Assembly: GCF_002113885.1 (NCBI RefSeq)
Contig: NW_018408922.1
Location: 2,098,458 to 2,162,457 of the forward strand
Reading direction: 5' to 3'
Origin: Mizuhopecten yessoensis
Taxonomy: Eukaryota
Length of the DNA stretch: 64,000 nucleotides
Part shown: piece after piece, positions 29,059 through 52,747 of the stretch
Position numbering within the stretch: the stretch's first letter is position 1
Layout: the number at the start of each line of letters is the position of its first letter
The notes under the pieces: model-generated
Told to the model about the DNA's origin: nothing
What the model saw: the letters and a program-made list of their open reading frames with translations, nothing else
The model's database searches: none
Program-made: the position numbers and the translations under genes

Positions 29059-29142
29059 AGATCGAGATCTCGACAAAAAATCTGATAACTTTGAAGGATG
29101 CATTTTGTCGACAGTAATATTTTCTGATGAATAGGAAGGCAT
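29059..29142 (-). CDS. Candidate alternative first coding exon (MPSYSSENITVDKMHPSKLSDFLSRSRS)
   Basis: Two in-frame ATGs (the second in AAAATG context), 28 open codons, phase-0 donor TCT|GTAAGTAA. Confidence 0.45.
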
Positions 29143-29265
29143 GGGAACTTTCTTCTTGCTGAGTTTTATAGAGTATATAATTCTAAATCTTCAGGTGTAG
29201 TATGTAGTAATTTCAAATGTACACTTCAAATATTTCACTCATGTGCATTAATAAAAATGAAAATA

Positions 29266-29536
29266 GAGTGAAACCTGGCTAATTTGACACCCTGTGAGTG
29301 GGACACAAACATGGTCAGGTCCGACAGGATGTCAGACTTCACAGGTTTTTCTTTAGAAAACACATAATTTTACCCTGATTCTGAAATTCTCAAGTTTCCT
29401 TTTTCTGTACATATAATTTATTAATCTGACCAAAAATCATTTTTAGTTTTCAGTAGAAATGGGATTACAACATCATGTTGTATTAGACAGGATGTCACTA
29501 TAATCACCTTTGGCCAGATTAGACAGGTTTTCACTG
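29266..29536. mobile_element. Tc1/mariner(pogo)-type MITE
   Basis: Imperfect TIRs GAGTGAAACCTGGCTAATTTGAC and revcomp CAGTGAAAACCTGTCTAATCTGGC, flanked by TA on both sides; 271 bp, non-coding. Confidence 0.7.
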
Positions 29537-29789
29537 TACATGTCAAACCTTTACAAATTGACCTCATCAATCTTAAACTGGATTAATCCATCCTGACATC
29601 ATCTCATTTTCTGGCGATTTCCAATTTCAATCCCTTCGATCATTCCATAACTAGGTAAGGAAATGACATTGGCTATATAAACAGAATTTCCCCATTACAT
29701 GTGAATAACAACTAAATGCTATAAAAGAACTCATAGTCTCACTACAATGATAAAAAGACCACAACATTTTTTGCATTTAACACGAATAG

Positions 29790-29992
29790 CACCTGTATAC
29801 ACAGGTTACCCTCATGAGAGACCACCTCTTTTATCAAAACAAATTACTACCTTTGTGAGGGACCACCTAATTTTTAAGACTGACAAAATTACTAAATTAT
29901 TTCAAAAGAACTGAACCTGTGTTTAGAAACCATTTTCCTTGAAAGACCACCTGTGTTTGTCAAAAGAGTTGGTTTCTCCAAACAGATTCTAC
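29790..29992. mobile_element. GACCACCT-subrepeat MITE family relic
   Basis: GAGACCACCT, GGACCACCT and AAGACCACCT units ending GTTGGTTTCTCCAAACAGATT. Confidence 0.5.
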
Positions 29993-30899
29993 ACCATATC
30001 AACACACATAGAACCAATGATTTAAACAACCTGTTATATCAATCATCACAACTTAGTGTGTCAAGATGATTTTGATGAACCTTTTGAATACATCATTAAA
30101 TTTTATTTCCAAACTATTAGAATTCAGATTTTTTTAAATTTTGATGCACACAGGATTCTTACTTACTAAATAAAAGTCATAGACGGAAGCCATATCTCAA
30201 GAGTATTGACTTTTCAAAAATTGTAAAAAATGGAATATTTCATAAGCATGTTACAATGACAGGCAGGCATGGAATGTCTGCAGCACTGCTCAACATAAAT
30301 CAGCCGGTCCCTAATTAAACCAAACAGGTTGTTTAACATGGGCAGACTTTCAATTAATGCACCCGTCAATGCCGCCTGTCCCTGCGGCCTGTCAGCTGTC
30401 AATACATCAAAGAAACATTGCGGAGTGTTACAGACAAGCCGAGTAAGGCTGAGCAGCACCTGAGAAGAATAAAACTGTGAAAGTCAGCGCTGACGATGAC
30501 ATTTGTGTCAGTAAGTATTTCGAGCTGTTGAAAGTGTAGGTGGTATTTTGGAAACAAGAGACATTGATGAGTGACATTTCGTGTGTCCATCACATCCATC
30601 ATGCACATGAATTACCCCAACAAGTCTGTGTTTCATCAGACGTTTAAACTGTAATGACATATAAGCATGCGGTATATGTGATGATATGCCTCTAGATTAG
30701 CATACTTGACAGAATCGTGGAGGCATTATGGCCGCGATGCTACATATTTTTATTACATCAACCTACTTGTGAACATCTAATTATTTATTGAACATCCATA
30801 GAGTTAATTTTTATATAATGCCATTACCTGGCTGTTCTTGTAAGTGTCGTTTTCAAGGCCTAGAAACATTAATTTTGTTCATCTCATCACAAATCTTTT

Positions 30900-31990
30900 T
30901 ATAAGACCCTTGGTTATAAACCTCTCATACTGCCATGAACATCAAGCAATCAACTTCTGAGGACCATTGGAAGTTCAGAATGCCAATAATTTCTGGAAGA
31001 CTATTGGAAGTGCAGGATGCCATTAACTTTTGAGGACCATTGGAAGTTCAGGTTGCCATCAATTTCTGGGGGACCATTGGAAGTTAAGACCCTTGGTTAT
31101 AAACCTCTCATACTACCACGAACATCAAGCAATCAGTTTCTAAATGACCACCTGTTGTTCATATTAACATCAACTTGTGGAAGACCATTAGAAGTCATGT
31201 TGCCATCAATTTCTGGAGGACCAATGTAAGTTCATGTTGCCATCAACCTGTGGAGGACCATTGGAAGTTCATGTTGCCATTAACTTCTGAGGACCATTGG
31301 AAGTTCAGGTTGCCATCAATTTCTGGAGGACCATTGGAAGTTTAGGATGCCATCAATTTCTGGAGGACCATTGGAAGTTCATATTGCCATCAATTTCTGA
31401 GGACCATTGGAAGTTCATGTTGCCATCAACCTGTGAGGACTATTGTAAGTTCATGTTGCCATCAATTTCTGGAAGACTATTGGAAGTTCATGTTGCCATC
31501 AATTTCTGGAAGACAATTGGAAGTTCAGAATGCCATCAACTTGTGGAGGACCATTGAAAGTTCAGGTTGCCACAATTTCAGGAGGACCATTAGAAGAGGA
31601 AATTTATCTTTCCATCAACTTCTGAGAACTATTGGAAGTTCATGTTGTCGTTAGCTTTTGTAGGACCATTGGAAGTTCACGTTGTCACCAACCACCTAAA
31701 CACCACTAGTTGTTCATGCTATCATTAAAGTCTCAAGAAACAGTGGTTGCCATTAGTCTTACTGGAATCAATTGTGGTTACAAAAATCTTTAGGTTGTTC
31801 ATGTTGCCCCAAACATTCAAACCTTCCAAGAAACAATGATTGCAATGAATTTTCTTAGAATGAGTTTTTATGGCTACCAACCTATCAGGGGTAATAGGTT
31901 GTTCTTGTTGTCATCCATCTCTGAAGAACCATAAGTTGCTCATGATGATATCAACCTCTGGAGAATCATAAGGGGTTCTAGTTGCCTCAA
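30900..31990. repeat. 36-37-bp minisatellite (GGAGGACCATTGGAAGTTCATGTTGCCATCAATTTCT), decaying after ~31690
   Basis: About 20 recognisable units. The block TAAGACCCTTGGTTATAAACCTCTCATACT is duplicated at ~30902 and ~31085. Confidence 0.93.
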
Positions 31991-34900
31991 ACATTGGCTA
32001 TTTTGCACCAACATCTAAAAATAACTGGTACATCATTTAGAACCCTTTGTAACATATTCAGATGTAATGAACAGGTGTTTCCATAAAAAGTCTGAAGTGG
32101 ACCAAAATACCATAAAAGTCACGGAACAAAGACAGGATTTTATCGGGGGTATTTGGGGAGGTGTATTAAAAGGATGAAATATATGAAAAGAGAAATTTTC
32201 ACCGGGTCTAAAAGGTTGTTGTCATTTAGAGAATTGTGGAAAGAGGTGCCGTTTAGGTTCTCATTAAATGACCCTTATGAGTACCCTGACAAATTATTAT
32301 GCCAAAAGGAAAGTTAATTTTGGCTACTGTTTCCACTATTGATAGAATATCTTTCATCAGTTTAAAAGCAAAATCATGATTTGTCATCAAATACATTAGC
32401 GTATGTAACAAAAGGCTACAGGTGTACAATGGTATCAATGCGACCAGGTAAATGTAACGAGATACCTGTACTTTACCTGGCCTATTATACCTGTAAACAC
32501 CTATACAGATGTTTGATCTTTCATAATGCTGTAATTAGGAAGTAATTTACCATGCAAAAAAATCTTCCCCGAAATGTTGCTAAACATCAATGACAGAAGT
32601 TAGGCTGTACTTATCAGCTGAATGAAAAACTGATGAACAGTGTCTATTTTGAGTTTCGTAAATACTTGAACACATGGTGGTATACGCATCCATTCACAGC
32701 TTGGTTCGTTCAAGATACCTGAACAAAGTGAAAATTACGCCATTAATCATTGTATTTAAAGTAATATTCACATGAGCATGAAAGTGCAGTCGTTTTTTTC
32801 TGTGAGGGTTGAAGAGAACACCCTGATCGACAGTTCACAGTACAGTCGATTATCCCTGTGAAATGTATGCATGCATGCACAAACATTTTGCAAGTGGGTG
32901 GTCCTCACGAAAAAGTCATAGACAATTGGAAAGTTTACTTTCCGTAGGTATTTTTTTTCTTTAAATTTGATGAAGACGTGTCACCTCGTTGTCAGTATCG
33001 TGTTACTATAGCAACTCTCCCCAAACTTGTTTTTGACACTACGATATACCAAGTAGATGTAAAATGGATGCCGGATTAAAGAACACTATATTCATTACAA
33101 ATAAACAGACATCATTCTTAAAATTTGACAGCGGAGTGTCGCCTTAATAAGATCAGTTCCCGACACATCTGTCACAGGTTGAAATCAACACACAATTGTC
33201 AGACAAACTCGCCTTCAATTCATTTTACTTTTTTTTCCCCCATTGACATCGTCATTCAGACCATTCAAATCCTTGTTTACAAGTTTCAAATACTTATTGT
33301 GAAAGTGGTTCTTGACAATTCTAGCATGACAAAACAACATTTTGACAGATGGATGTCAACAGGTAGAATTTAAATAAATGAAACTATCGATCATTTTCAT
33401 TTATTTGTTTTATAAGCAAATCAAGGATTAAATAAAACTGATGCAATATGCATTACAAAATTTAGGACATTTAGAAAAGCATGTTAAAAACGTACAATTT
33501 TATACTAGTACAATTTTTATAACTTTCAGATAAATGAAGAAAATTCCACGTTTTAAAATAGTCCTCATTATTAGGATCCAGTCCATTTTTAAATAACAAA
33601 CTACAACTAGCTAAGGTAAATTTTGAAAATTTCCCCAGCATTGATCTGATTTTTTTTCTCAATTTCGTTGTTCAAACTCCCCTGATTCCTGCATGACTAT
33701 GGCGAAATCAAATCCCTTGAGAAAAGTCGCTACAAGTACATGTCAACTGTTTTTAAAATTCTGTTAAGCTTGATGATAAATTTTTAAAAAATTGTTAAAT
33801 GTACGTTAAAAAATATTGCACCTTCGAAACTAAAACATACTTACACAGAAATTCAATAACAAATTTCTACAAACAATACTACACAAATATGATTGCAAAT
33901 TGTAAGATAAGTTGAAAAGTTTTTTACTTGAAAGTAAGCTACTTGTACTAACAAAGCTATAGCACTCTGCCCCTGAAGTACAGCCTCTAGCAAAATGTTT
34001 CTATAGTTTTTATATAAGGGTATTAATTCCGTCAAAACATTTTCTCAATGAAACGGCACCTTTTTTTGTGTGTCCTTTCGCACCTGTATGGTACAACTGT
34101 GTTGTAATGTATTAGCACAGCGTGTTTACTCTAGAGTGCACTGTATGTGTGTTCAACGACCGAAACGCTGCACCCACGACCTTTATGTGACCTTCAACAA
34201 TCGTGGCCTGTTTGAAATATACCAACTGGTAGTCTTTCAACTTTTAGAGAAAATAGAGAAAATTGCAACGTAATTTGATGTGACATAATGCAATTAAACG
34301 GTTCGTAAAAACATTTTCTCTTATCTAGCCTGATCAATGTTTTGAACATAATTAGTTTCTTATTTGGACGCAACTACTTCCTGTCAATATTTTTCGTCTA
34401 CGTCACTCTAAGAGTTGATATGTACCTCTAGCGAAGATATAACATTTCTGACACGCGGAGTTCACCCCCTCCCAAAACCATTGTCAATTTGTTGTGGGTC
34501 TGTAACTAGATCAGCCCCTTCCCCCAGCTGGAGTCAACTAGTTTAAGGTGAGCTCCAACAAAGGCGATTGTCTTGACCCCTAATGGCCAAAGAGAACACT
34601 AGACTACCCCCACCCGTAATTCACACCTGTACACAGGTAAGTATTGTTTACTGGACACAAGTTGACTCATTCATTAACGAGCTAGTCGTCACAGGTGTAA
34701 CAATAGCCCATCAAATGGGATGTAGACTCGAGGAATTTGAAAGCCGAGAGATCAGTATCTCCCTGTACGTTAGTTACTTTATGACACGACAATCGTAATT
34801 GTACTGCCGGAATGCCGTTTTGATAGCAAGCACCAGGATGTGAGTTTGTATATATATATACACACTCGAGTGACTTGTTATTACGCCTCCCCAGGGTCAA

Positions 34901-36739
34901 GTACAACCTACCCTAACTTATACCTCTTGCAAATGACAGGTCGATCTGACGAAACATATACGTCATACCCCGTGTCGGGACATCCCAAACAAACACACGC
35001 AGACCACAATGAGGCAGCCCGTAATTAAATTATACTGTTTGACTTACGTAGCTTAAAAGGTATGACAGACAATTTTGTTGCAATTTCGGTCCAAACGCCA
35101 ATGTCTATATGTGTGTTGAACACAAATGGGTTTGTACCTAAAACCACAATTGTTGCCAAAATGTTTAATCTGCAATAGACACCGACTTGTCAATTTCTGT
35201 CAATCATTTCTTTTCACCTGAGATCACTCATCGGCATGCACTCGTCAATTTTCTGACCAAGTGGACACGCTTCTATCCTTCTAAATATGTAACCCATCTA
35301 ATTGGTCTGGTAGCTCATAAATAAAAATGTACTTTTCAAAACTGTCAAGCTCTAAAGGATATTCTGGGAACGATTTTTTGTATTTCTTTGATAACCTTGT
35401 ATCATTCATTTTATCAACTTTCGAAATGGACAGCTCAAAATGACAAGCAGAAATATAGTAGCACCAGACCATTTGAAAGCATTTGTATGTACATCAGCGT
35501 AACCTTTACCGGAAAATGAAAAAAGTTCAGAAAAAATATCTCCCAAGATCAAAAATGAAGAATTAAGAAAGAAAATTTAAATTGTAATATGGTGTGCTTG
35601 AGTCTCAATAATGATAATAAAAGACTTGATATAAATATTATTTATTCAATATCAAGAACAGAAAAAAATGAAATTCTGTAAACTTATGAAAAATCAATGA
35701 AGCTGTAGAAAAGATTGTTTTTTTTTACAATTTAATTTAAAATGATGTCTTAACATATATAGTCATTGTGTTCATAGAATTATTGTAAAATTCTTTATAT
35801 ATTTGTGAAAACACTTTTACTGTGGGAACGATTATCTTACGATTATATATTGTAATGAATATTGAGCACAAAATATGGTTGATTACTATTTGAATGTTTT
35901 ATCAAGTTTTGTAGCAATCTTTTAAATATGATACTCAGTTCTGCGGTGGAAGAGGATTTTGCATGGTACACAATCTGGCGTTTCCCAGTAGTGTGGGACC
36001 TTATTTCTTCCTCTCCATTGTATGGACCTAAATATAATTTTATTTGATATGTTAGTCATCGTTAATCTATATTAGCAATTAATCAATCCTTTTAAATGTG
36101 TTTAAAAGTTGATTATTATCATAATATTTACTCTAATTGGTTTAAATGCAATTCAAAATTGGAACTCTCCTCAAGAGGAGATCAATTTAGTGTGGGTAAA
36201 GCTGATGCCCTAATTTTCTGTCAAGTGTCTGTGTGATAGTATTGGGTTGACAGTGTGCTCTGACACATGGCTAAACAAAAACGCTAATGAAATTTGGACA
36301 ATATCAACAATGAAGATCTCCATTTGACCGAAAAATTTGTTGTGACTGACGAGGCACAGGGTGACATCATGTCATGTTTCATTGTATGGATCTACAGGAC
36401 ACAGGGTAACGCGATATGAAACATGACACTCAACACAACAATGGCTGGTTAGCCGAGAAGACCTCACGCTTGATGACTGGTGTTTATACAGAACATAATC
36501 GGTACAAGTAATATTTATAGCTATATGAAGTACTGAGCTACATCAACTGAAAGAATATTATAATAGATTTCATTTAATCATTTATTTTTCAATATTTACA
36601 ATTTCATTGTATGGTTTTTAGGAAAATCTGTTGTTTAAATGCAGGTCTTGAAAATTTCTTTCATAATAGATAGATCAGTCTAAGAACAAACTGTCTTTTG
36701 TAACAGACCATTTTATTTCATGAGGAATAAACCGATCAG

Positions 36740-37012
36740 AGGACAGAACATGGTTTGAGAGGTCACCTGTCACCTAAGACCACCTATATTGGAAATTCTG
36801 TCTTGAAAGACCAGCTATTTAAGAGTCTACATGTGTCAATAGAGACAGTTTAGCTGTTTTTTCAATAGTGAGTTGTCTAGAGAACTAGAGATCACCTGTT
36901 TAAAGAGACCACCTGCCTACAGATCACCTGTCTAAAGAGACCATACCATGGCTATCTACTTTAGAGGTCGCCAATTACTTACGAAAGCAATGGCCTTTTA
37001 AGACAGGTTCTT
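36740..37012. mobile_element. GACCACCT-subrepeat MITE family relic
   Basis: Repeated AGAGACCACCTG/AGATCACCTG units ending AAGACAGGTTC. Related relics at ~310-415, ~29790-29990, ~52310-52540 and ~62525-62905. Confidence 0.55.
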
Positions 37013-37506
37013 AAGTATAATGGTTAGATGATAGCAAATTGGTCCATTTTCTAATATTAAGAAATTAAACCTGTTTATTACTGATAAAAGAATATATATG
37101 TCCTTCATATAAACAAAGAAAATATCTCATCTTTAAAACCAGTACATTTTCAGAATTTTCAGCTATTTTCATGTTTTGCTATTTTCTATTACCTAACTTT
37201 TGGAGGTTCTGGTCCTAAAACATAACATCTAAACTAGGGGTTTTCCGTCTCCAATGTGTCGAATAACCCATAAACTACATGCAGGCTACATGAACGAGGA
37301 AGAGCTCTCTTTGAGCCAATACCCATCTCCGAGAAAGGTTATTCAGTAAATATATTTTGCACTTAAACATGTCAAAAACATGTTTCGACTGAAACATTTT
37401 ATGCAGAATATGACAAATTTACATAAAAAACCTATTATTGTATAAAATTACACAAAAATAAAGTATACTTTTAAAAATGACATTATCTTGTGTAAATCAA
37501 ACTCAC

Positions 37507-37611
37507 CGTCTTGACCCGACCCTTTTTATCTGCGGAGGAGGGGATGTTCTCAACTCGCATTAATGACGAGACTACAAGATGGGGGCAGGCTCGTAAAGTC
37601 AACAATGGCAT
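37507..37611 (-). CDS. Candidate alternative first coding exon (MPLLTLRACPHLVVSSLMRVENIPSSADKKGRVKT; frame open from the ATG at 37698)
   Basis: CAAACAATG start, 35 open codons, consensus phase-0 donor ACG|GTGAGT, locally raised GC. Confidence 0.5.
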
Positions 37612-38753
37612 TGTTTGTTCCGGACTATACACTCTTCCAAACAGAATTACGCCCTTTTCTGAATTATATGTGACAATTATGATCCAAGTAAGGGTCATTT
37701 ATGGACATAAAATTTGTTAACAGGCCTAAATATAAAACATTTACGTTTGTTATTCATATTAAACGTATCGCAATAACTGTTTCACACAGTCTGGTTCGGG
37801 ATTTTTTTAATGTTTAGAGGATATGTTTTCCTAGACAGGGAACAGACATTTAGTGCTCGTATTATCCAAATGTTTCAACAATTACCGACCCCAGCATATG
37901 ACCTCCTGCCACCGTTGGCCAACACAATACATGTCACATTTTAACATTGACAGGGTTTGTCAACTTTTCAGCACCTTGCGATGCAGACTGATTGACATAC
38001 AAAAAGACATGTATTGTGTTGGTAGGAGTTCCGGATGTCACGGCCAAACTTGCTTATCGACATGTATACCTTACATACGTAAGTAAATAACTACTTACGT
38101 ACAAAGATTCAAGCAAATAAAAAGTATTGTTAGATTGACAAATGAATTGTTCAACATTAAAAATTAAAAAAATCCATAAAATTCGTAAAATGTTTATCAA
38201 TTTTCATTAAAGTTTTTTTTCATACAGCAGGGTTTAGATTATCACCTGGAAATTTTAAAGTTTATTTTAAATTATCATCTTTTTTTTTACCCATCAAGCT
38301 AAGCAGACTTCCAACACCTAGTCCTGACGTGAGTATTCTGTAATGCTAAACCAACAAAACATGCAAAACTGGTGAAAATATTTATAACCAAACAAAAATT
38401 AAAAGTGCATTTTCGTTTTTTCCCCCACACAAATTCTTGGCTTAGCTATAATGCATTCTTTATGTACGCTGATAATCGGACTCCGATATGAATGTAAAAT
38501 ATGGCAATCTTTAAGACCATATTTCTTTTCATTCATACTTTGTTACAATAATTTTCGTAATAAACACCCTTCACATTCACATATATATGCTGGAGAAGGT
38601 TGCTCACTACTTTTAACTTTTTATTTCGAAGAATAGCAGAGATTCAAGGGGGCAAAATGTTGGTCATAAATACATGTTATTGATGATTAGATTGTATTTT
38701 TTTTTTATCTATATCTAGAAATAAAATTAACTCTGACCTTACATCTTTAAACA

Positions 38754-38845
38754 TTAAACTCATTCACCCCTAAAATTTCATAATGAACTATTCCAACCTT
38801 TGAAGTGGAAGAGTTCCAATGTGTCTTCAGGGGTAAATGAGTTAA
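38754..38845 (+). mobile_element. ~92-bp TTAA-flanked MITE, copy 2
   Basis: TTAAACTCATTCACCCCTAAA...TTCAGGGGTAAATGAGTTAA; terminal inverted repeats with TTAA at both ends. Confidence 0.8.
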
Positions 38846-40299
38846 AAGGTAAACAATTACGTTTACACAAAATCAAAATCCTACATATTCTCCAAAATAA
38901 TGCAACCACCAAACAGGAGATAAGGCAGCAGAAAATGACACGATATAAATCTTAATCGTTTAAAAACTGATTATAACAGCATGATTAAAATGGAATGAGC
39001 ATTATTTTGATCAAATACGACAAACCCTAACCTTTTGACATATGTCAAATATTACAAAATATGACTAGGTGAATTCCAAAGGTGTAAATAATTACCAAAA
39101 CTGTAAGTACTTACCCTGTTCTTATATACTTATGTTTACTTAAATCAGTGCCTGGACGTTCCTTTTGTAGGTAGGAAATGTAATCTACAAAATCTGAAAG
39201 TCTAAAGAGGATTAGCGTTTTACGTGCATTGATGCTTGGGCAGCCAAATTTTATTATACGCTTAACATTTGATGTGTATTGCCAGGGCATTGTATGCTGG
39301 TCTCACCAATAGACCTTTCCTTAAATCCACAAAAAAAATGATATGCACCGTTCCAAACCCTGACATTAATCAAATACTCTCTCCCGAAAAATTAGAAAAG
39401 TTCTTTTTGCCGAGTTGCATGGCATTAGCTATTGGATACAGGTTTATCAATCTGCGGTGAATGAGGAATGACAACTATAACCCTTAAGCCATTGAAAGGT
39501 ATTCAAGTCTTTGGTAGATGTACTTCCCAGTATATATGTTTCCATTTCTACAGCTGGGATGGCTGGAACATTTTATCAAGGTCTTGGAATTCATAAGATC
39601 TCAAAACTATGAAACTCTTAAAAAGTCAGAATAAAGACTAATGGTACATTTGGACTATGCAAATACGTTTACTGTGGTATAATTTTGATAGTAACTATAC
39701 CATTCTAATAAAACAGCTGAACCAGCAATTCTGTGAACAAAGACCACCATTTTACCTCCTTATCAATTGGATGCTCTAGCTGTTCAGCCCTATTTATGCC
39801 AACTACACCAAGTGCCTGTCTATCAAAACACATTTGTTTTAAGTGTTCGTTACTTGAACAGTACCAAATTAAAACTTCCAACATCCCATCTTCAGAACAA
39901 AGCTTCTCACAAAATCTCACAAAGCAAAAAGTATTCAATATATGGTTTAAATGTTTTTGCTATTCTATCTTCTTCGTGGCTTAAATTATCATTTCTGTAA
40001 TTGAGTTTTTTTTAGTATTTCAACAAAAATCATTGAGAGATAATCTAAGTTATATTTAATCATTCATGCTTGCATTGCTCTGAGGGTTATATTTCTTGAG
40101 CCTTATAAAGCAACACTATATACTAGCCCTGTACGTTGTTGTGAGAAATGGTATTAACGTTTTATTGCAACTTATAACAAATTTCAGTACATTTCAATAG
40201 AATACTACAATTTTCACTTATCAAAACAGATTTGCTTTCAAACATTAGATTAACTAATTGACTCGAAGTGTGATTTCTAAGAACAGTATCCTATTAACA

Positions 40300-41715: not shown

Positions 41716-41737
41716 TTACTTGCATATAGTATTTATT

Positions 41738-42290: not shown

Positions 42291-43351
42291 GGAGTATAGG
42301 TAATGCCATAGGAGTTTAGTCATTTCATATAGGTGTATATAGTGTCTGCCTAGCAGTAAAACGTCCTATACTCTAGCATACACTATTCCCTTTCCCTCAG
42401 TCAATGTTGACTTAATGGGTCCAGGAAGTCTCTCAAATAAACATCACCCTGATTAGACGACAACTAAATTATGATTGTCAAGTCAAACGGCACAAGCCAT
42501 TGACCATTAATAAACTTCACCAGCCAATATTCAATTTTCTCATGACACGTGGAAAAGCATGTCGTCTGCTGTGGGCGTGTATTACCCCTGCAGGGGTTCT
42601 ATGATTCTGAATTGGCAAGAAAACGCTATTGCTTCATCAAGTTAAATCTTCGGCCATTCATTTATAACTGCGGGTCATTCGGGTGGCAATTTTTGTGATT
42701 CGATCACGTAAATCATAGTTAAAAGGACAGACTTTATGTCGGACCAAAGGTCTGGTCATTATTTTCCTCATTATCAACAATTATGATGAATAGCATGGCT
42801 ATTAGGTTCATGCAGGAGGGAGGTCAAATTGGACATGAGGGGTCATTTCTATTTAACTGACCCTCGGATAATTCGAACTAACAATGCATTGGGCCATGAT
42901 GAAGTCAGAGGACTTCTCCCTAAGTACTTCAGATGTTAGAATTCAGAATTAATTCTGTGTTTTCCGAGTGAAATATTGTTCGTTTCAGACAGCTGCACGT
43001 GTACTATGGTAACGTAAAGTCTTTGTCTGAATGAGTAACACTTGTACCACTTCATGATTCTACCAACATCGAGTACAAACTAATCAATTCCTCTTGTTCA
43101 GATCAGTTTCTAAAAGAAATATAAAAAAAAAAAATCTGAAAAATTCTGTCCGACCATCAAACGATATCGCTAATAAGTCAATTTTTTTATGATGAAATTA
43201 TTGGAGATATTGTATCATAACAAATAACTGCTAGCACGAAACACCATTATGCTACTTATGGTAAAAACTTATCATAATGGAATTATTGATGATGTAGTGA
43301 AATTTTCTTTTTCAAAACATGGCTACGCTTGTTACGCTTGAAACAAGGGTT

Positions 43352-43504
43352 GGTCACAGGCACCATATGTAATAGGAGCAGAAAAAAAATGCACTGTCAG
43401 ATCGGGGTTCGAACCCATTACGACCTTCCAACCTCTAGACAAACACTTAACGATTGAACTATCTTATCAATATCGATCAACCCAGTCCAGTTCTCCCTAC
43501 TACA
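43352..43504 (-). mobile_element. Short LTR-like unit (TGTAG...TTACA, 43504-43368) containing a tRNA-like sequence, followed by a PBS-like TGGTGCCTGTGACC
   Basis: TG...CA termini, internal degenerate A box TAGTTCAATCG, B box GGTTCGAACC and a T8 run. A TGG-initiated PBS-like sequence starts 2 nt after the CA. Confidence 0.5.
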
Positions 43505-46500
43505 CCCTATTTATTCAGTGTATACACAATGTCATATATTTTGCTAATGAGCTCACATAATATGGCCTATTTTTAATGATAATGAAATGACATCACAGAC
43601 TTCAAAATTACAGTACATAACTCAAATAAATATAGAGCCAAATGGCAGAATTTTAGACTTCATGTTAGAATGACCTGGAAAGACATGTTTTTTCTTCAAT
43701 AATCGTAATATGCCTCTATATCATATGATAAAATCTTCAATTCATTTTTATTTCATAAAAGGTTCATAAAACTAGTCACAAAATTTTCCTTTTAGCCCAC
43801 TTCATATTAAAACCATCTATGAAATTGGAACTCATATGCAATCCTTACTATGGGTGTACATGACATTGATCATAATACGTCTTCAAGTTAAGGTGGGCTA
43901 ACTAATAGTCTAGACTATATATATCAATTTGAACAGAAACACATTCCATAAAACTGGGCCCTTGTGGAGAAACGGGTAAATTTTGGAACCATTTCAGTGT
44001 TTATCATCTATGTTGGATATATACATGTTTAAACCTAATATTTGATGTTATTAATATGATAAAATGTCGTAGAAATAACTTCACTTGTAATCAATATCCC
44101 TGAGACGATTTCAAACCCAAATGAAAGCAATCATATTTGCCATTGAACAGTTACCATGACAACAAAATTCAGACATTTTACCCATAATCATTCACTGTTA
44201 TCTGATTTCAGACCAAAATCAAATTTGTTTCCTAATATGATGTTTTCAATGATTCACGATTTTCATTTTAATCTTCCGGATATTAATTTGTCTCCCATTT
44301 TATCGGGTTATGTGAAAGGTGACACAGATTTTGACCTCTCCATCATGACAATCATCTGTCCGACAGATGTAAAAGATCGGAAAAAAATATAATCCAGATT
44401 ACTTTTTTTAGGTTTTGGATTGGTTTAAAATCCTTATTTCATCAAGACTTGGCGATTGTTAATATTTGTCAGTTCTGCAACTTATTCGCCGGTGAAGCGT
44501 AAGATATCAGCGTAAATCATCATTATTTCGTAAAGACCATTCTCGCTTCAGCGATTATTTTCCACAGAACCATGACAAGGAAACAAAATACGAGATAATT
44601 AATTGAACTTGTCTTGTTATCTTCACAGAAAGAGAAATTGCAATAACGTTCTTTCTTCAGAAGTCAGAGAAATAAATGAGGCTTATTGAAGGTATTTACA
44701 TTTCAATGTTGGAAGCAAAAATTAATATCATTACTTCGGAATCTTAATGAATAGAATCATAATACGAGAGGCGATCATGCAATTTGCATGTCGACAAAAG
44801 TGCGAAAATGAATACGGCATTGTAAAATGTTCCCCACCATTTACATTCATTAGGCATTAACGTCTGGTAGAGTTTAAAAGCCAAGTTAACAATTATGATT
44901 TTCAATATCTCAGAGCTTATCTGTATCATCTCTAGGGATAACATAATGTTCCGAACAATCTGGTTTTGTTTGTTGTCAAGCTAATAGTATCGCCAATCAC
45001 AGCTGTCAAATCATCATGAATATTCATGATTCATTGAAATCCTCAAAACGAAATATGAATTTTCTGCTCAACACGTTTTTTTTAATGAAAGTGACACCAA
45101 AGAAGATTGATTCTTTATGCAATATATGATTTAAAGATCGTGAAATCGTGGCATATAGAACAAAATTTTACCTAAAAAAGGTAATTGAGATATCCAAAAA
45201 AACATGTATTGTGCATTGTAAAGCAGACAAATTGAAATCTACGAATGAAAAATACACTTTCACTTAAACTCATTGCTTCCAAGATTACCAGCTCTGTGGT
45301 TTTGGTTAATTTCTGACATACCATATTCAAGCTAATAAATCGCCCAAATGTTTATATAGTCTTAGCAACCCATTATTTTACTATAATGTTCAGACAACTC
45401 AAAAAAGTGCAGTAATTCTTATTTTACCCATTTGCTTAGCACCCCAGCTCTCTGCATGTGCAGAATGGGTATAGCCACTGGAGTGCTACTTGATAGTGTT
45501 TAAGAAATATATCAAGTTTATCATACTTGCAAAACTTTTGGATTTTTTCTGGGGGACAAACTGCAAGATAAAACCTAAATGTGACTGGAAAAAAAACAGT
45601 GATCATAAATTCCTAGCTATTTGACACAACAATAATGTAGAAAGTCATAGTTTGGCTGTTCTATGCAATGAATATGAATTGAAGTTGACCAAATTGTAAG
45701 ATGAAGGGAACTCTGTTGAACAGGCTCCTTTGCTTCAAAATAGGGAGATTTGGTAAGTATGCAATATATACACATTTTGTCCATTTTGTAATTCTTCCAT
45801 TTTGAAAGATGTTGGAAGCTCATGACTATACATCCATCGCATGCAAAATTCCTGATTCATCAAATTAAAGTATTTGAATAATGAAATTAAACAAATTCTG
45901 GTAGACTCTAGTAGAACCAGGATATCATGGGCTCTTTTATATAAAATAATCTTACATACAGATGTCTGAAAGGGAGACAAAACTATCTTAATTAACTTGC
46001 CAGTCACTTCCCTAAGGGATCGCTCAGACGTTTGACATGCAGGCGAAAAATGTCCACAATACCCAACAGCATCAAAGAGAGGCTTGAACAATTAAGTTGG
46101 TAGACCTGTCTGCAAATTACAGTCAACATTTTTGTTCTATCCAAACTCAAATGACAAATTATCCTGACAATAGGATTTCATGGCGCTGTATTTTTTTCAA
46201 TGTTGTTAATTTCTGAAGTTTTGAGGTGATCTTCAGGACTTTTAAAGTCATCCATTAGGAATTACTCTATACAATTTAATGATAATTTTAAATATTAAAA
46301 ATACATAAGATTATATCCTAAACAGCCTTCTGCTCTACATTTGAGCTTCTTTTGTTTTATAATGAAGACAAATTTTAAAGAACTTTTAAATAAAAACCAA
46401 GAAACACTTTTTTTGGAGGGAGTCCCAGGGAATAGGAACTAACAGATTTATTTTTTTCCTTCAGACTAATTTCAGAACATTGCAAAATTTCTCTCTGCAT

Positions 46501-49500
46501 TTCACAGAAAGAACAATAGGGATTGAACAACAATAGAAATTAAAAATGGTTGAAGGATGTTGTATTTTTATTTTTCCCCTTTTAGACTATTAAATGAACC
46601 AAAAGGCATTACAAGAGGCGTTTATGGCACGTTCTTAGTTCAGATAAGCTTGGAAAAAGAAAAAAAAAAACTTGTCTGATTATTCAAGTGGGCACAAAAA
46701 CACTGAAGTTAAGTCAACGTTGCTATTTTTTTGTCAATTTTCACCAAGACAAAGCAATATAATGTCATTAAGGACAGCGCTGGTACTAAGCCAAATGTCA
46801 TTTTCACTTCTTGGACAACGTCCAGACGATGAGATTAGGTTTATTCGCAAATTGTTCCCTAAGAATCGTTCTACGAGCACTCATCATACACTCGAAAACG
46901 AACTGATTACTGCCGTAATCGGACTCATTCATGGTTCAGTGATTAGGGAATGAACATCCATTGTAGTGAATGAACGTGTACGGCTGTGATCGGAAATTCT
47001 CTCTCTGGTTAAATGACCCCAGAAAATCCCAACTGTGAAGAGCGACGAATCTTGCCTTCGGTGTTCAATATGTAACTCTAAGAGATATTGACTCCCGAGC
47101 AATGGAGAGTAGAAAACACAGATGTCGCACAAGAATGTTTCACGGAAGATTTGAATGATAGCTAAAATTAGATTTTATCAAGAGCACAAGGGCAAACAGA
47201 TCATCAGTCGTATTTATATCTCGAGTGTTGTAATAAATTTGCAGTTGAGAAAAAACATTTTCAAAAACAAACGAAAAAGTCATGTTCCCTTATAAACATA
47301 TGTTAATTAAATTTTGTAATGTTGTTATAATCATGAATTTCACAAATTTTATTTACTTTTTTCCAGTTTTTAATTTGTAACTATTTTCTTACAAGTTTTG
47401 TCGACAAGAAACATTTTGTCGTTACGACTCTCTTGAATTAAGATCTTTGTCCTTATCAGGAAAATTACAAAAATACCAAAGCTGTAAAAATAACCCTATA
47501 TATGTAATACACAATTTCCATTTTATACTCGTCTAGAAAACTACAGATGACCATTCTTTCATTTCACTCTTTGTCGCTAATTATGTTATATTTTTCGCAA
47601 TATACTGTATTTGACAGTAAAAATTAAATCTCTTCTATCTTATAGACTTGGTGTGTAAAAAAGTTCATCGTATTAATGACAGCCGATTCAATTATCACTA
47701 GACTTATCACATAAACACAGCAAAAAAAAAAAACACCTGAAAATGATCATGTTACAGTAGCATTCTTTGTTCTTCGACAGAACTTTTCAAGAATCAAAGT
47801 CTCTCTGTTGTACGGACGTAATCTCCAGGAGTTTGCAAAAGAACAAACAGAATCTAAAGGAAAAGAAACCACATGTGTATTTCTAACCTGTTAACCAGAG
47901 AAACGTAATTTACAATGTATCCAAGGAATCCGGATTTTGATAAATTCATCCTTCTTACATGAAAGCGAGAAACATATGTAATACCCCCCTCTTGAATGTA
48001 GGTCAACTCGACACCCTCCCAAACATCACAGACAGGTGAAGGACAGGTACACACAAAACTCTTACCTTTGATGTTGACTCAAAAGACAGGTAACACTCGT
48101 TTGGTCCAGGTAGATTATTAATAGGTACACACTTTTCCTAGGTGTTATGATTAATGATACATAAAAAACATAACTTAGACAACAAGCGTTAAGACTTCTC
48201 GTATACCACACCTCCATGTATCGAATCATATTTGCATTACAGTAGTTGTTTTATTCAAATCAAAATCTTTCAGATAGATCTCGAGAAAATAAACACTTTA
48301 GCTTGCACTTCCTTAGAAAAGGGAATCAAAAGGGATTTAACGAATTAGAGGGATTACATTTGGTCATAAAAACAGGGGTCATACCATGAAAATTGTATTG
48401 TGAACGGTCGTATTATTTGCGGCAGTATAACTTCAATTCACTGAAAGCCTAAATCTCTACCTACACAGAATTTACTCGGGATTAATATTTAACAAGTCAA
48501 TCTGCAGGGAGACCCTAAAATAAATACACAGATGCCAGGTCATAAAATATGAAGGTGACAATTTTTTTTTTAATTTTATCAAATGATCTATTTTAGTCGA
48601 TTGCAGTTTGTAATTCATTTTTATCAAAATCAATAATCTGAGAGTCAATTTTATTTTAGTTTTATCAAACAGCGATCTTTTTATTCCAAATTGAATTGCA
48701 ATTTTATGTAATAATAGTATCCAACGGAACCAATCACAGCTACGGAAACAAATGAGATCGGTTTAATCAAATGAGGCTTGATACAGAGTCAGATAGATGA
48801 CCTCTGACCTTTGTGCCAGTAAATTTCAACCAGACATTCTGTTGTTTGGTCTCCCCCATATTTCACATAAATAAAATGATATGTCACAGAATTTCACATT
48901 TTCATAGAATTGTTAAACAACGATTTGTAATTGTAAGAACCAACATCATGTACATATTACAATATACGTTCAATAGCTGAACAAAATTATCTTATGAAAG
49001 TGACATGATATTGGAGCTCTCGGGAGCAAACAGATCGAGTCCATTATTTCTGGACTTGCTTGAGTGACCCATCGAAACACAGAGCTTAACTTGATGTTCT
49101 GAAGCCACTGCGAGTCAAGTTCGACTCCTGCCTGGAAGGAAGCCAGTCTAACAAAAGCTTACTTCCCAATATGCTTGCAACCAATTTGTACTGCTGGGTA
49201 GATTGAAACAATCAGGGTAATGTTTCATGTTCAAAGATAAAAAAAAATATGTCAAGTGCTAGCTGTATTTGACTTTTTCCTTCCGAGGGAGAAATAAAAT
49301 ATCACACTAATAAATTATTAATTTTGATCTACATGGGGAAAACCTCTATAAAAAGTTCACAGTTTGTTTTTGAAAACTAACTTACTTAAATTAATTTGAC
49401 CAAACAGATAACTGATCTCCCACAAATAAAAAGGATGCATTACACTTTCAGGCAGAGGAATATCACTAGTTTCAAAAAACACAAATAACAAACTTTTCAA

Positions 49501-51868
49501 ATAAAACACATAATTTAAAAGGGAAACAATCCTTAATAAAAGCAGGACACTTTATTTGAGTGCTCACAATCTCAAAAGATAAAGTTAAACTTTGAAAAAA
49601 CAAAGCAAAGGAAAAGAAATTCAGTGTAAAGAAGCCATACATAATAAGACCGAGACATTTCTATCGACAATGCTGAAGAATGTCCACAATTGAGGCGACA
49701 TTGCCGCAATCCATATATATATATAGTAAATAAAGTCCAAAGCCCATCGCTCCCCGTACAAAACATTCGCTTTTTGAGGCAAGAACTCCGTAACTCAATT
49801 ACCTACACGTCCAGTTAAGGAAATGAGAACTTCTAACATTTGAACGAAGGCAGGTGGTATGTCATTTCGTAAAGTTCTTGATTTGTTTGAATGGCAAAAA
49901 ACCCAGACGAAGAAAATCAACGCTGGCAATACGATTTGTCCTTGCGCAGTCAACTCAATAGCAGCAATGATTGTCATATCGTGCTGAAGCAACTTAATAC
50001 CGTAGATGACCTTCAATTTAGATGGACACCAAGATCCAATTATCATTTTTTTCCTTAACATTCCTTTTGTTAATTTTATGTCATTTAAATTTTCAATTTA
50101 ATTAGAATCAGTGCTAACTGCTTTTAGTTTAAAATCCAACTTGTAGCAGCTGGGTCAATTTATTTTTTAAATATTCCCCTTAAATTCCTTGTTTAAACTT
50201 TTTCCGACATTTTCAGCAATCATATTTATTTGACCCTATAAAATGTGCATTTTAAATGTTTTTGATACGTTTGTTCCAGTTTAAACCAGGTCTCGGGTCT
50301 CTTAAAGATAAAACTGAATGGCTAATTGCAATGTCTTGTCTCGCGCTGTAGTAAAGATTTATCATAAATGGATATTTCTGATATTTTAAGAAACTACAGA
50401 AAAACATCTAGGAGTATTGTGTCTAGAGCTGCCGAGGTTATGCAATAGCGATAAGACACTGCATCTATGTTTTTTAAAGACTTATTTAAAGTGGATAGAG
50501 TATTGATTACGCCAGGAGATAAATGTCGCTTCATTTATAAACATCCTCCAAGATCATATCTCTATAGCTGTACTGTACTTATACATGCATCAGAAATGGA
50601 TTTTACTGAAAGTTATATTTTTGTACAAAAAATTATGTTATGTTGGATTTAAAATTCCTCCTATAATATCACTTTTAAGTCGGTTACCAATCTCATAATC
50701 TATTTATAGCTCCCGGCCCGTCCACCCAACATTCATGACTTTTAATTGAACTGTGTCCAATACTATCCACCATCCCCAAGACCCTTCCACATGATTCCTC
50801 CATCCTATATATATACATGACTAACCATCTCCTTGTCCCATCCCCACCCCTGGGGAATCCTACTTCACTGACTATACCTACCATTTCATTCATTATCCCC
50901 CTCCCCCATTTCCCTGCCAACCCAACCCTAACCCAACATGAAAATATCATTATATTAAATATCATTGAAGAACCCCTCAATTACTAAGTTTAGACCTTCT
51001 TAATGGTTTTAAATCAAACCATGTAAGTGATATTAATAAGTGTATAATATAAATGTGCTCAATTACTTATTGGCCGAGCTGAACAGTAATCTCATGTACG
51101 AGTCCTTGGATATTTAATTATGTATCTATAGAAGTTAAGGAGAATGTTAGTTTCTGAAGTTTTGCAGTGAAAAAAAAATGTTTGTGGAAATATGAATAAA
51201 GTGGTGACATACGTATACACTGTTGGAGCTTTGGGTGATGTTGACTGAAACTTCTTAAATCTTCATAATCCCAAATACATGAAAGTAACTTCTCTGACTT
51301 GGATCTATTTCTCATAATATCTGCAAATGATTACTGCCTGTGGACTTCATGTATCAGCCCAGTGAATAAGTACGTACGCCACGAACCATCAAACATCTCT
51401 GTCCCGTCGGGATCGGCTGTCAGTAGCAAACACATGTACAGCGGCCCCTACCATATTGTAAATGTGGGAGTTACTCCCCTTGAATCATGAAACGGGTAAT
51501 TAATCACATTTTTTTATTCAAAGCTTATATAATTTTATACAAGTTTCGTTTATGACAGTGATCGATTTGCCTGGAAAGATATCTGGGATTTATATATAAA
51601 AAAAAAAATCCGGGGGATTAGAATTAAAATCAACGAGATTTTTAAACTTAAAAGAGTTTGTGTGAAATCGCGAAACTTATGATTTTCATTGAAACAAGTT
51701 TCAAATATTGGATGACGAATAACAAATCAAATACGCTCGTGTCCACATATGATTAACGAAATTGTCGGAAATATGGTCCAAGTTCCACAATTATTTTATA
51801 CAGAAATCTTAGTGTTGACAGGTTGTTGGGTGTACAAAACACAGTCTTTAAAGAAAAGTTTATCTTAC

Positions 51869-51901
51869 CTTGTGCACTTTCCGCCAAAAGTATCCTGTCA
51901 T
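51869..51901 (-). CDS. Candidate alternative first coding exon (MTGYFWRKVHK)
   Basis: GAAAATGA start, 11 open codons and a strong phase-0 donor AAG|GTAAGA. A CpG/CRE-rich promoter-like stretch lies immediately upstream (51960-52080). Confidence 0.5.
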
Positions 51902-51929
51902 TTTCCCAAATAACTGACAACACTAGATA

Positions 51930-52080
51930 CAGTCAATATAGGGCTCAATGTACAACCGTTCTGTCCCACAATCTACGTCACGTCAGAGACGTTTACTACT
52001 ACTATGACTTTATATGTCTCTGGTCACGTAATACACGTGCATTTCCCCCGCCGATGACGTACGGACCAAACGTAGCAGTG
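51930..52080 (-). promoter_or_regulatory. Putative alternative promoter (CRE/ATF and E-box cluster)
   Basis: TACGTCACGTCA, GTCACGTAA, CACGTG and TGACGTA within ~100 bp, directly 5' of the 51901-51869 exon candidate. Confidence 0.45.
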
Positions 52081-52615
52081 ATCTGAATTTGTGTCAAAGA
52101 TATTGTTTTTTTACCAATGCCGTCGCCGTATGGCCATCTTAGCTATTGCAAAGACGTTAAAACCCTAATAATTCGACTACTTATGAAGAAATAAGGTACA
52201 TATATATCAATATTTTTATGCTCAGACGTTTCAAAATTGTAGGGTAACTTGAGGAGTTGAAGAGTCATGTCAGTGCATATAATCTCTAGTTAGACAGAAA
52301 CGCTTGTTAAAGGGCTGTGATAATCTAGTCAGCGCGGTCCTAAATAACGGCATCTGTAATAAACGGCCACCGTCTGTCTTCAGCGGTCACTTGCAGGTCC
52401 GCCGGCCTAACCCATTTTTAAGGCGGTCATATCTCTATAAAGCGACCAACGTTAACGCTCACTGCCGTTACGCGGTTATTTTAATATCCAGGAGTTTTTT
52501 GGGTCAACATCATTTGGTGAGCGGTCAGCTACACATAAAGCAAATTTAAACAAATATGGCAATTAAAATGTCTTCCCTATAATTTTGAAATCGACTATTA
52601 GTATATGCTTTTTAC

Positions 52616-52747
52616 CTGTGAGGTTGTGACTGTCCCGTCGCTACAGATGATGGGAGGGGGTGAGGCCTTCACAGGGGAGTGGCTGACAGGCACGGGTATG
52701 CACGACCGTGGCTTCCCTTTCTTCTCCATCTTGCATTTCCGGGAATC
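52616..52747 (-). CDS. Upstream exon of the same gene (44 codons, DSRKCKMEKKGKPRSCIPVPVSHSPVKASPPPIICSDGTVTTSQ); probable start ATG at 52729
   Basis: GC-rich island bounded by acceptor ATTCTTGCAG|GAT and donor CAG|GTAAAA. It is 132 nt and open, and its phase-0 end is compatible with the phase-0 acceptor at 13916. The ATG is in AAGATGG context. Linkage to the 13916 exon is inferred. Confidence 0.7.

What the first reader, a model, noticed from the sequence alone, without database searches (positions are those of the whole stretch)
29059..52747. Array of mutually alternative, phase-0 N-terminal exons feeding one KIF26-like exon
Seen: four short minus-strand segments (52747-52616, 51901-51869, 37611-37507, 29142-29059) each have an in-frame ATG in reasonable context, an open frame and a near-consensus GT donor exactly in phase 0. 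This matches the phase-0 acceptor at 13916. Inference: a multi-promoter locus making kinesin-11 isoforms with swapped 11-38 aa N-termini spread over ~24 kb. Caveat: other strong donors I checked (48066, 39115, 35049, 33845, 22710) lacked an in-frame ATG, so some of the hits could be chance.
Basis: partly seen in the sequence, partly recalled or inferred. Interest (0 to 1): 0.7.

Follow-up and report, generated by a model that had tools for sequence, protein, structure and literature searches.

The report
KIF26 start exon plus chance look-alikes
Of four proposed swappable first exons of a mollusc KIF26 kinesin gene, one is the ordinary, conserved exon carrying the start codon, and the other three look like the ATG-plus-splice-donor coincidences expected in a 39-kb intron.

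Summary
All four minus-strand ATG / open frame / phase-0 GT segments exist as described, and so does the phase-0 acceptor at 13916. Such pairs are not rare here. At a mid stringency there are 18 in the 50 kb upstream of 13916, against 18.7 +/- 4.2 in shuffles. The criterion that admits all four picks gives 104.

Only 52747-52616 has independent support. Its ATG (52729) opens a peptide that aligns from Met1 with the N-termini of three gastropod KIF26-like gene models. It ranks 1 of 913 among all ATG-opened peptides in the window. In all four species the ATG lies 6-18 nt after a pyrimidine-tract/AG acceptor. So this is the canonical start-codon exon, most likely preceded by a non-coding exon. 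It is not one promoter-proximal member of an array.

The other three (51901, 37611, 29142) have no homologue, no Pfam family match and random-looking composition.

The gene is a real kinesin-11 orthologue. The exon 13916-12969 acceptor is conserved at the same codon in two other species. Motor exons with the KIF26-type 'DLGS' motif lie about 156 kb downstream on the same strand.

Verdict: ordinary gene structure with a 38.7-kb first coding intron. The alternative-exon array is unsupported, and only transcript data could exclude it.

The parts
52616..52747 (-). Start-codon exon of the KIF26-like gene: 18 nt of 5' leader after an AG acceptor (52749-52748), then 38 codons from ATG 52729, then donor GT at 52615-52614 in phase 0.
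   Evidence: Sequence. Its peptide aligns from Met1 with gastropod KIF26-like N-termini and ranks 1/913 in the window. The same acceptor-then-ATG layout is seen in three gastropod loci. GC is 0.58-0.60 against 0.37-0.39 in the flanks. Single copy in the genome.
52727..52729 (-). Inferred initiator ATG, in the context caagATGg (A at -3, G at +4).
   Evidence: Cross-species similarity begins exactly at this Met.
52694..52705 (-). S-C-I-P, an SxIP-type motif at residues 9-12, preceded by an invariant Arg8 (R-S-x-I-P invariant in all four species), inside a basic, Ser/Pro-rich N-terminus.
   Evidence: Alignment A1: R8, S9, I11 and P12 are invariant in the scallop-like sequence and the three gastropods. 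EB binding is not tested.
13917..52615 (-). Inferred first coding intron, 38,699 nt, GC 0.35. It contains a SINE and tandem repeats but no supported exon.
   Evidence: Direct joining of 52616 to 13916 is frame-compatible but is inferred, not shown.
12969..13916 (-). Large N-terminal coding exon of 316 codons, phase 0 at both ends. It ends inside the KIF26A/B tri-helical domain.
   Evidence: Homologues were found. The acceptor is conserved at the same codon in L006 and L007.
51869..51901 (-). Candidate 2: ATG plus 11 codons plus AAG|GTAAGA. Unsupported.
   Evidence: No similarity to any homologue N-terminus. It is one of 7 sites at >=8/9 in the window. It can also be read as a 45-nt in-frame cassette after 'tgttgtcag', by my reading of the sequence. 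My stricter cassette scan did not list it.
37507..37611 (-). Candidate 3: ATG plus 35 codons plus ACG|GTGAGT. Unsupported.
   Evidence: Single copy. GC is 0.505, moderately raised. No homologue similarity except one uncorrected p=0.015 against P0024 (n.s. against P0023 and P0036). No Pfam match for the 71-aa ORF. The opposite strand is also open across it.
29059..29142 (-). Candidate 4: ATG plus 28 codons plus TCT|GTAAGT. Unsupported and the weakest.
   Evidence: GC is 0.345, the same as the intron background. Poor ATG context, C at -3. Donor 6/9. No homologue or Pfam match.
21219..21484 (-). tRNA-derived SINE-like element inside the intron. It explains the strongest GC peak there.
   Evidence: tRNA-like head. 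The SINE label comes from inspection only.

Best explanation
The window holds the 5' part of one very long (at least 216 kb) minus-strand KIF26/kinesin-11 orthologue.

Translation most likely starts at ATG 52729, in an exon (52747-52616) that itself begins at a splice acceptor. A non-coding leader exon therefore probably lies further upstream, in or beyond the CpG-undepleted zone at 52-64 kb. That exon encodes a 38-residue basic, Ser/Pro-rich N-terminus with a conserved R-S-x-I-P motif.

Its phase-0 donor is most simply joined across a 38.7-kb intron to the phase-0 acceptor at 13916.

The three other ATG/donor segments are chance co-occurrences in AT-rich intron sequence. They are not alternative first exons.

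Shown: the exon's homology, its architecture, and conservation of the exon 13916-12969 acceptor. Inferred: the splice join, the upstream non-coding exon, and non-use of the other three.
For: 1. Conservation in exon 13916-12969 runs right up to the acceptor. Two homologues lack the internal Met, so a coding exon upstream is required.
2. The peptide from ATG 52729 aligns from Met1 with P0023, P0024 and P0036. Shuffle p values are <0.0005, 0.046 and 0.004. The other three candidates are essentially not significant: eight of nine comparisons have p>=0.1, and 37611 against P0024 gives an uncorrected p=0.015.
3. Window-wide, it ranks 1 of 913 ATG-opened peptides. Its score is 94 against 50 for the next, z 6.1 against 3.4.
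4. It is also the best tblastx hit of the gastropod start regions in the scallop-like upstream 11 kb.
5. In L003, L004 and L005 the start ATG lies 12, 15 and 6 nt after a pyrimidine tract plus AG. Here the distance is 18 nt.
6. In the gastropods this start exon is part of the same gene model as the KIF26 N-domain. In P0024 the PF23081 match scores 51 bits.
7. GC is 0.60, like the 13916-12969 exon at 0.55, against 0.35 for the intron.
8. Candidate counts are at chance at 7/9. In-frame cassette candidates number 2 against 2.1 expected.
9. Kinesin motor exons lie on the same contig and strand.
Against: - No transcript evidence was reachable, so no splice junction or transcription start is demonstrated.
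- BLAST E-values for the 38-aa exon alone are not significant (E about 0.2-4). The case rests on the start-anchored rank, position, strand and shared architecture.
- Only gastropod N-termini were available. No other bivalve N-terminus was found (blank; the length filter makes that blank uninformative).
- At the strictest donor threshold there is a nominal excess of phase-0 candidates: 7 against 2.3 +/- 1.5, with 0.5% of shuffles reaching it.
- The 37611 segment is moderately GC-rich (0.505).
- The frame is open from the acceptor to the ATG in all four species, and the spacing is always a multiple of 3. The true start could therefore lie in a still more upstream exon.
Confidence: 0.8

Rival explanations
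1. One reading: a multi-promoter locus in which two or more of the four segments are genuine, mutually exclusive first coding exons. Each is spliced to 13916, giving KIF26 isoforms with swapped N-termini.
For: - All four have an ATG, an open frame and a phase-0 GT.
- There is a nominal excess of phase-0 candidates at donor match >=8/9, 7 against 2.3.
- 51901 lies inside the CpG-undepleted zone, with o/e 1.2.
- 37611 is GC-rich.
- The C. elegans orthologue VAB-8 has several isoforms (bioRxiv 10.64898/2026.10.09.757662).
Against: - There is no enrichment at 7/9, and 104 candidates at the stringency that admits all four picks.
- There is no homologue similarity or Pfam family match for three of the four.
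- The peptides are hydrophobic, aromatic and Cys-rich, unlike the Ser/Pro/Arg-rich KIF26 N-terminus.
- 52747-52616 begins at an acceptor, so it is not a promoter-proximal first exon.
- 29142 has background GC, a weak ATG context and a 6/9 donor.
Confidence: 0.08
2. 52747-52616 is an internal coding exon. The real start codon lies in a further upstream exon, and Met at 52729 is internal.
For: - The frame is open from the acceptor to the ATG in all four species.
- The acceptor-to-ATG distance is 18, 12, 15 and 6 nt, always a multiple of 3.
Against: - The residues between the acceptor and the Met are not conserved, and cross-species similarity starts exactly at the Met.
- tblastx finds no conserved upstream coding block in 11 kb of the scallop-like sequence, 10 kb of Aplysia or 2 kb of each Elysia-type locus.
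- Three separately deposited genome annotations start at this Met.
- The Kozak context is optimal.
Confidence: 0.08
3. The start exon is real, but one or more small unrecognised coding exons lie between 52616 and 13916. The two exons are then not joined directly.
For: - The intron is 38.7 kb.
- Gastropod proteins carry 100-300 extra residues between the N-terminal motif and the conserved N-domain.
- The 51914-51869 segment can be read as a 45-nt in-frame cassette (from the sequence).
Against: - tblastn of the gastropod N-terminal regions finds nothing else on the minus strand.
- In-frame cassette candidates occur at the chance rate, 2 against 2.1.
- The GC peaks in the intron are explained by a SINE and by repeats.
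- Phases 0 and 0 already fit a direct join.
Confidence: 0.12

Closest known systems
Vertebrate KIF26A/KIF26B (kinesin-11)
   Same: - The N-terminal region ends in the KIF26A/B tri-helical domain (Pfam PF23081). The window exon matches weakly because an intron cuts the domain. Homologues match above the cut-off.
- Downstream motor exons carry 'LHLIDLGS' in place of the usual switch-II DLAGSE, and blocks such as 'GKSYTM..LGIIPCAI'.
- That these blocks are typical of KIF26 is my recollection of the human sequences. It was not tested here.
   Different: - The first coding exon is short (38 aa) and carries an N-terminal R-S-x-I-P motif.
- The first coding intron is 38.7 kb, and a gap of about 156 kb (one or more introns) precedes the nearest detected motor exon.
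- The large 13916-12969 exon contains a Cys/Ser/Pro repeat expansion, which is the subject of another note.
Gastropod KIF26-like gene models P0024 (GCA_000002075.2), P0023 (GCA_019649035.1) and P0036 (GCA_003991915.1)
   Same: - The N-terminus follows the same pattern, M-x-x-x-x-[RKA]-P-(S)-R-S-x-I-P-..-S-[HK].
- The start ATG lies a few nucleotides after a splice acceptor.
- The start exon is followed by the conserved 'DYPIRGT...FVFGRP...C-x-x-C-N-x-C...LKRQALRL' N-domain.
   Different: - The gastropod start exon is much longer, about 170 aa in Aplysia, and its intron is only about 0.25-7 kb.
- The second exon begins at a different place ('LERSVIGCE').
- That the assemblies are Aplysia and sacoglossan sea slugs is from my memory of the accession numbers.
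C. elegans VAB-8 (KIF26 orthologue) isoforms
   Same: It belongs to the kinesin-11 family, and more than one isoform is known. That a shorter form comes from an internal promoter is my recollection only.
   Different: As I recall, the VAB-8 isoforms differ by the presence or absence of the motor region, not by short swapped N-terminal peptides. Nothing here shows an internal promoter.
SxIP microtubule plus-end-tracking (EB-binding) motifs
   Same: It has an S-x-I-P core in a basic, Ser/Pro-rich, apparently disordered context. The core is conserved across four molluscs.
   Different: Binding is untested. A full-text search for KIF26 together with SxIP found no paper describing such a motif in KIF26.

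Membership tests
Kinesin-11 (KIF26A/B, VAB-8) | KIF26A/B tri-helical N-domain (Pfam PF23081) | tested here: inconclusive
   The window exon matches only profile positions 1-25 (E 0.1, 13 bits, cut-off 27), because the exon ends inside the domain. Most homologues of the same exon carry precomputed PF23081 hits (9 of 10), and P0024 scores 51 bits. The next exon was not found in the window.
Kinesin-11 (KIF26A/B, VAB-8) | Kinesin motor domain downstream in the same gene | tested here: met
   Pfam Kinesin matches lie on the same contig and strand at C5595:1954808-1955074, 1943148-1943321 and 1938335-1938547. The first and third score 39.5 and 40.4 bits, above the 29.3 cut-off. The middle fragment scores 24.8, below it. 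That they belong to the same transcript is inferred.
Kinesin-11 (KIF26A/B, VAB-8) | Degenerate switch II (DLGS instead of DLAGSE) | tested here: met
   The open frame in L008 reads '...RSRLHLIDLGSS...'. That this is a KIF26 hallmark comes from my own knowledge, not from a tool.
Array of alternative first exons (multi-promoter gene) | More ATG / open frame / phase-matched donor segments than chance gives | tested here: not met
   18 against 18.7 +/- 4.2 at 7/9. Other phases and the other strand give similar counts. The excesses at 6/9 and 8/9 are inconsistent with this.
Array of alternative first exons (multi-promoter gene) | Each exon conserved, or encoding a recognisable N-terminus | tested here: not met
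   Only 52729-52616 matches homologue N-termini. The other three have no such match and no Pfam hit. No close-relative genome was reachable, so DNA-level conservation of the three remains untested.
Array of alternative first exons (multi-promoter gene) | Own transcription start upstream of each exon, and splice junctions to the common acceptor | not testable with these tools
   No RNA-seq, CAGE or cDNA for this genome is reachable. 52747-52616 begins at an acceptor, so it is not a first exon.
SxIP plus-end-tracking motif | [ST]-x-[IL]-P core in a basic, Ser/Pro-rich context | tested here: met
   Residues 3-17 read K-K-G-K-P-R-S-C-I-P-V-P-V-S-H. R8, S9, I11 and P12 are invariant in four species.
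SxIP plus-end-tracking motif | Binds the EB homology domain and tracks growing microtubule ends | not testable with these tools
   This needs a binding or imaging assay.

The most novel reading that the evidence does not exclude
At least one of the other segments is a real alternative first or cassette exon. The most plausible are 51901-51869, which lies in the CpG-undepleted zone next to the start exon, and the GC-rich 37611-37507. Promoter or splice choice would then make a KIF26 isoform that lacks, or displaces, the conserved N-terminal R-S-x-I-P motif. That would switch a putative EB-dependent plus-end targeting on and off.
Probability: 0.08. Interest if true: 0.45.

Novelty: new member of a known kind. 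Interest (0 to 1): 0.15.

Why it matters
- It prevents a false isoform-diversity claim. In a 39-kb AT-rich intron, dozens of ATG / open frame / GT coincidences are expected.
- It fixes the likely true N-terminus of this mollusc's KIF26 protein. It also shows that the exon layout (acceptor, short leader, ATG, R-S-x-I-P) is shared by a bivalve-like genome and heterobranch gastropods.
- The one mildly interesting by-product is the conserved SxIP-type motif at the extreme N-terminus of molluscan KIF26. It gives a directly testable hypothesis of EB binding. That motif is the subject of a separate note.

Tried and rejected
- **Word search with the 13916-12969 exon and the full HMMER search.** They returned only single-exon ORF fragments and a few partial gene models. 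There was no full-length KIF26 and no same-species protein, so annotated isoforms could not be compared.
- **Word search with the 44-aa start exon.** It was blank. The length filter (about 24-77 aa) makes this uninformative.
- **P0002's 61-kb contig.** No DNA was available. The contigs of P0001 and P0015 are only 2.3-2.5 kb, so upstream exons of closer relatives could not be inspected.
- **Repeat test.** All four candidate regions are single copy, so they are not transposon-borne. Only a 40-50-nt repeat lies near 52027-51977, outside the candidate exon.
- **tblastn of gastropod N-terminal regions against the window.** Nothing was found beyond the start exon. Many spurious hits fell in the tandem repeats at 6-9.3 kb and about 40.5-41.7 kb.
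- **PF23081 over the whole genome.** There was no match, because the domain is split by introns. The tool itself warns that this blank is uninformative.
- **Hidden features in the intron.**
  - In-frame cassette exons: 2 against 2.1 expected.
  - Recursive-splice 'ratchet' sites: 1 (near 22650) against 0.5 expected.
  - tRNA and Rfam scans found only a borderline tRNA-Glu-like hit at 62626-62696.
- **Conserved upstream coding exon by tblastx.** None was found.
- **Left out by rule.** Exons were searched one by one, by reference. The single N positions (17334, 23100, 61011) were left as they are.
Full report
**Observation**

The four minus-strand segments are in the sequence as described.

| Segment | Content | Donor (match to MAG\|GTRAGT) |
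|---|---|---|
| 52747-52616 | In-frame ATG at 52729, 38 codons | CAG\|GTAAAA (7/9) |
| 51901-51869 | 11 codons | AAG\|GTAAGA (8/9) |
| 37611-37507 | 35 codons | ACG\|GTGAGT (8/9) |
| 29142-29059 | 28 codons | TCT\|GTAAGT (6/9) |

- For the first segment, 52747 is the first base after 'ttcttgcag', not the ATG. An out-of-frame ATG at 52736 opens a 31-codon overlapping frame.
- For the third, the frame stays open back to another ATG at 37698.
- For the fourth, the ATG has C at -3.
- The common acceptor is real. AG lies at 13918-13917 and the exon starts at 13916 in phase 0. It runs 316 codons to AAG|GTAAGT at 12969/12968. An in-frame TAA at 13925-13923 stops the frame from extending further upstream.

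**Is it more than chance?**

I counted every ATG + open frame (at least 8 codons) + phase-0 GT on the minus strand of 13917-64000. I compared the counts with order-1 to order-3 Markov shuffles, with the other two phases, and with the + strand.

| Donor match | Observed | Order-2 shuffles | Shuffles reaching observed |
|---|---|---|---|
| >=7/9 | 18 | 18.7 +/- 4.2 | 63.5% |
| >=6/9 (needed to admit the 29059 donor) | 104 | 79 +/- 9 | 0.5% |
| >=8/9 | 7 | 2.3 +/- 1.5 | 0.5% |

- At >=7/9, phases 1 and 2 give 18 and 21, and the + strand gives 11-14.
- The excesses at 6/9 and 8/9 vanish at 7/9. I therefore read them as limits of the null model plus a post-hoc threshold, not as a signal, but I record them.
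- In-frame cassette exons occur at the chance rate, 2 against 2.1.
- Recursive-splice-like sites also occur at the chance rate, 1 against 0.5.
- The pattern as a class therefore carries no information. Each candidate needs its own evidence.

**What the gene is**

- The window is G000:C5595:2098458-2162457, in a 988-Mb assembly of 82,659 contigs. From memory those figures fit a scallop assembly. I did not verify this.
- The 13916-12969 exon has homologues that carry Pfam PF23081 (the KIF26A/B tri-helical domain). It matches the first 25 profile positions itself before the intron cuts the domain.
- On the same contig and strand there are kinesin motor exons. The nearest lies about 156 kb downstream of the 13916-12969 exon. 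They include 'GKSYTM...', '...LHLIDLGSS...' and a 1,060-codon tail exon.
- The gene is a kinesin-11 orthologue spanning at least 216 kb.

**An upstream coding exon is required**

- In two other species the homologous exon begins at the very same codon after 'tttcag' (L006 and L007).
- Protein similarity runs right up to that boundary.
- The internal Met of the scallop-like exon (residue 18) is absent in P0003 and P0004.
- The start codon therefore has to lie upstream of 13916.

**Which upstream exon?**

Three partial gene models have spliced N-termini:
- P0024, from GCA_000002075.2, a 98-kb gene.
- P0023, from GCA_019649035.1.
- P0036, from GCA_003991915.1.

From memory these assemblies are Aplysia and sacoglossan sea slugs.

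- All three models begin M-x-x-x-x-[RKA]-P-(S)-R-S-x-I-P-..-S-[HK].
- The peptide opened by ATG 52729 aligns with all three from Met1. M1, R8, S9, I11, P12 and S16 are invariant.
- Shuffle p values are <0.0005, 0.046 and 0.004. The other three candidates essentially do not match: eight of nine comparisons have p>=0.1, and 37611 against P0024 gives an uncorrected p=0.015.
- BLAST E-values for so short a peptide are weak, so I ran a window-wide test.
  - Among all 913 ATG-opened peptides of at least 20 codons, on both strands, 52729 ranks first.
  - Its score is 94 against 50 for the runner-up, z 6.1 against 3.4.
- The architecture is shared too. In the three gastropod loci the ATG lies 12, 15 and 6 nt after a pyrimidine tract plus AG. 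Here the distance is 18 nt.
- The exon is a GC island, 0.60 against 0.37-0.39 in the flanks, like the 13916-12969 exon.
- It sits at the edge of a zone where CpG is not depleted, with o/e about 1 from 51.5 kb to the window end, against 0.4-0.7 over most of the intron.
- It is therefore the orthologous start-codon exon, and it is an internal exon of the transcript. A non-coding leader exon should lie upstream, in or beyond the window.

**The other three candidates**

- They are single copy.
- They have no similarity to any homologue and no Pfam match.
- Their peptides are hydrophobic, aromatic and Cys-rich, as random AT-rich translation is. They do not resemble the Ser/Pro/Arg-rich KIF26 N-terminus.
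- 29142-29059 has intron-level GC (0.345), a poor ATG context and the weakest donor.
- 37611-37507 has raised GC (0.505), but it is also open on the opposite strand.
- 51901-51869 lies 715 nt downstream of the start exon's donor. It can equally be read as a 45-nt in-frame cassette. Nothing distinguishes it from the other six sites at 8/9.
- The large GC peaks in the intron are a tRNA-derived SINE and repeats.

**Most likely mechanism**

- There is one main transcript: a non-coding leader exon, then exon 52747-52616 with the start at 52729, then a 38,699-nt intron, then exon 13916-12969, and onward to the motor exons.
- The 52616-to-13916 join is in frame (phase 0 to phase 0), but it is inferred.

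**Alternatives that stay open**

- The start could lie still further upstream. The frame is open from the acceptor to the ATG, and the spacing is a multiple of 3 in all four species. Against this, the intervening residues are not conserved, and tblastx finds no upstream coding block.
- Small unrecognised exons could lie inside the intron.
- Internal promoters could give occasional use of the other candidates.

**Comparison with known systems**

- This is an ordinary member of the KIF26/VAB-8 family with a long first coding intron.
Nothing here supports it.
- The conserved N-terminal SxIP-type motif is the only feature with some novelty. A full-text search found no paper linking KIF26 to an SxIP motif. 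It belongs to another note (s1-509513).

**Verdict**

- Interest is low.

Noticed in passing
window 52694-52708; P0023, P0024 and P0036 residues about 8-13: An R-S-x-I-P (SxIP-type) motif at the extreme N-terminus is invariant between this genome and three gastropod KIF26-like models. Aplysia P0024 carries a second, similar stretch ('T-N-I-P-A-L-V-G-S') further along, resembling its own N-terminal 'S-S-I-P-T-F-V-R-S'.
   Followed up: partly
window 52729-52747; L003 9989-10000; L004 1986-2000; L005 1995-2000: The distance from the acceptor to the start ATG is 18, 12, 15 and 6 nt in the four species. It is always a multiple of 3 and has no in-frame stop. This is either coincidence or a hint that coding continues from an upstream exon.
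   Followed up: partly
window 52641-52736 (-): An out-of-frame ATG 7 nt upstream of the main ATG opens a 31-codon frame that overlaps the start of the coding region. L004 also has an out-of-frame ATG between the acceptor and the main ATG.
   Followed up: no
window 51500-64000: CpG observed/expected is about 1.0 and GC about 0.40 from roughly 51.5 kb to the window end. Over most of the intron the values are 0.4-0.7 and 0.35. This looks like an unmethylated promoter-side domain whose edge coincides with the start exon.
   Followed up: partly
L006 575-600, compared with window 13916-13890: In another species the homologous large exon begins with ATG directly after the acceptor (cag|ATG GAT GAT). 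P0014, P0016 and P0019 have the same Met. Here the position is AAT and the nearby ATG (13915) is out of frame. Some lineages may start translation in this exon.
   Followed up: no
window about 6000-9330 and about 40500-41700: Long tandem minisatellite arrays are open in several frames on both strands. One reads as 'SHPIILGISPT'-type units, the other as 'RYYTTID'-type units. They attract spurious protein hits.
   Followed up: no
window 62626-62696 (+), within the GC peak at 62550-62815: A tRNA-Glu(TTC)-like sequence scores exactly at Rfam's gathering threshold (29.1 bits against 29). It is either a tRNA gene or the head of a SINE.
   Followed up: no
window 51977-52027: A 40-50-nt repeat has at least six other copies in the genome at 86-95% identity. 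It lies just upstream of the 51901 candidate and does not overlap it.
   Followed up: no
window about 22650 (-): There is a single recursive-splice-like site, a T-rich tract followed by AG|GTGAGG, in the 38.7-kb intron. The expected number is 0.5.
   Followed up: partly
G000:C5595:1934922-1955074 (L008-L010): The motor-domain and tail exons of the same gene lie 156-177 kb beyond the 13916-12969 exon. They include one open exon of 1,060 codons. The gene spans at least 216 kb.
   Followed up: partly
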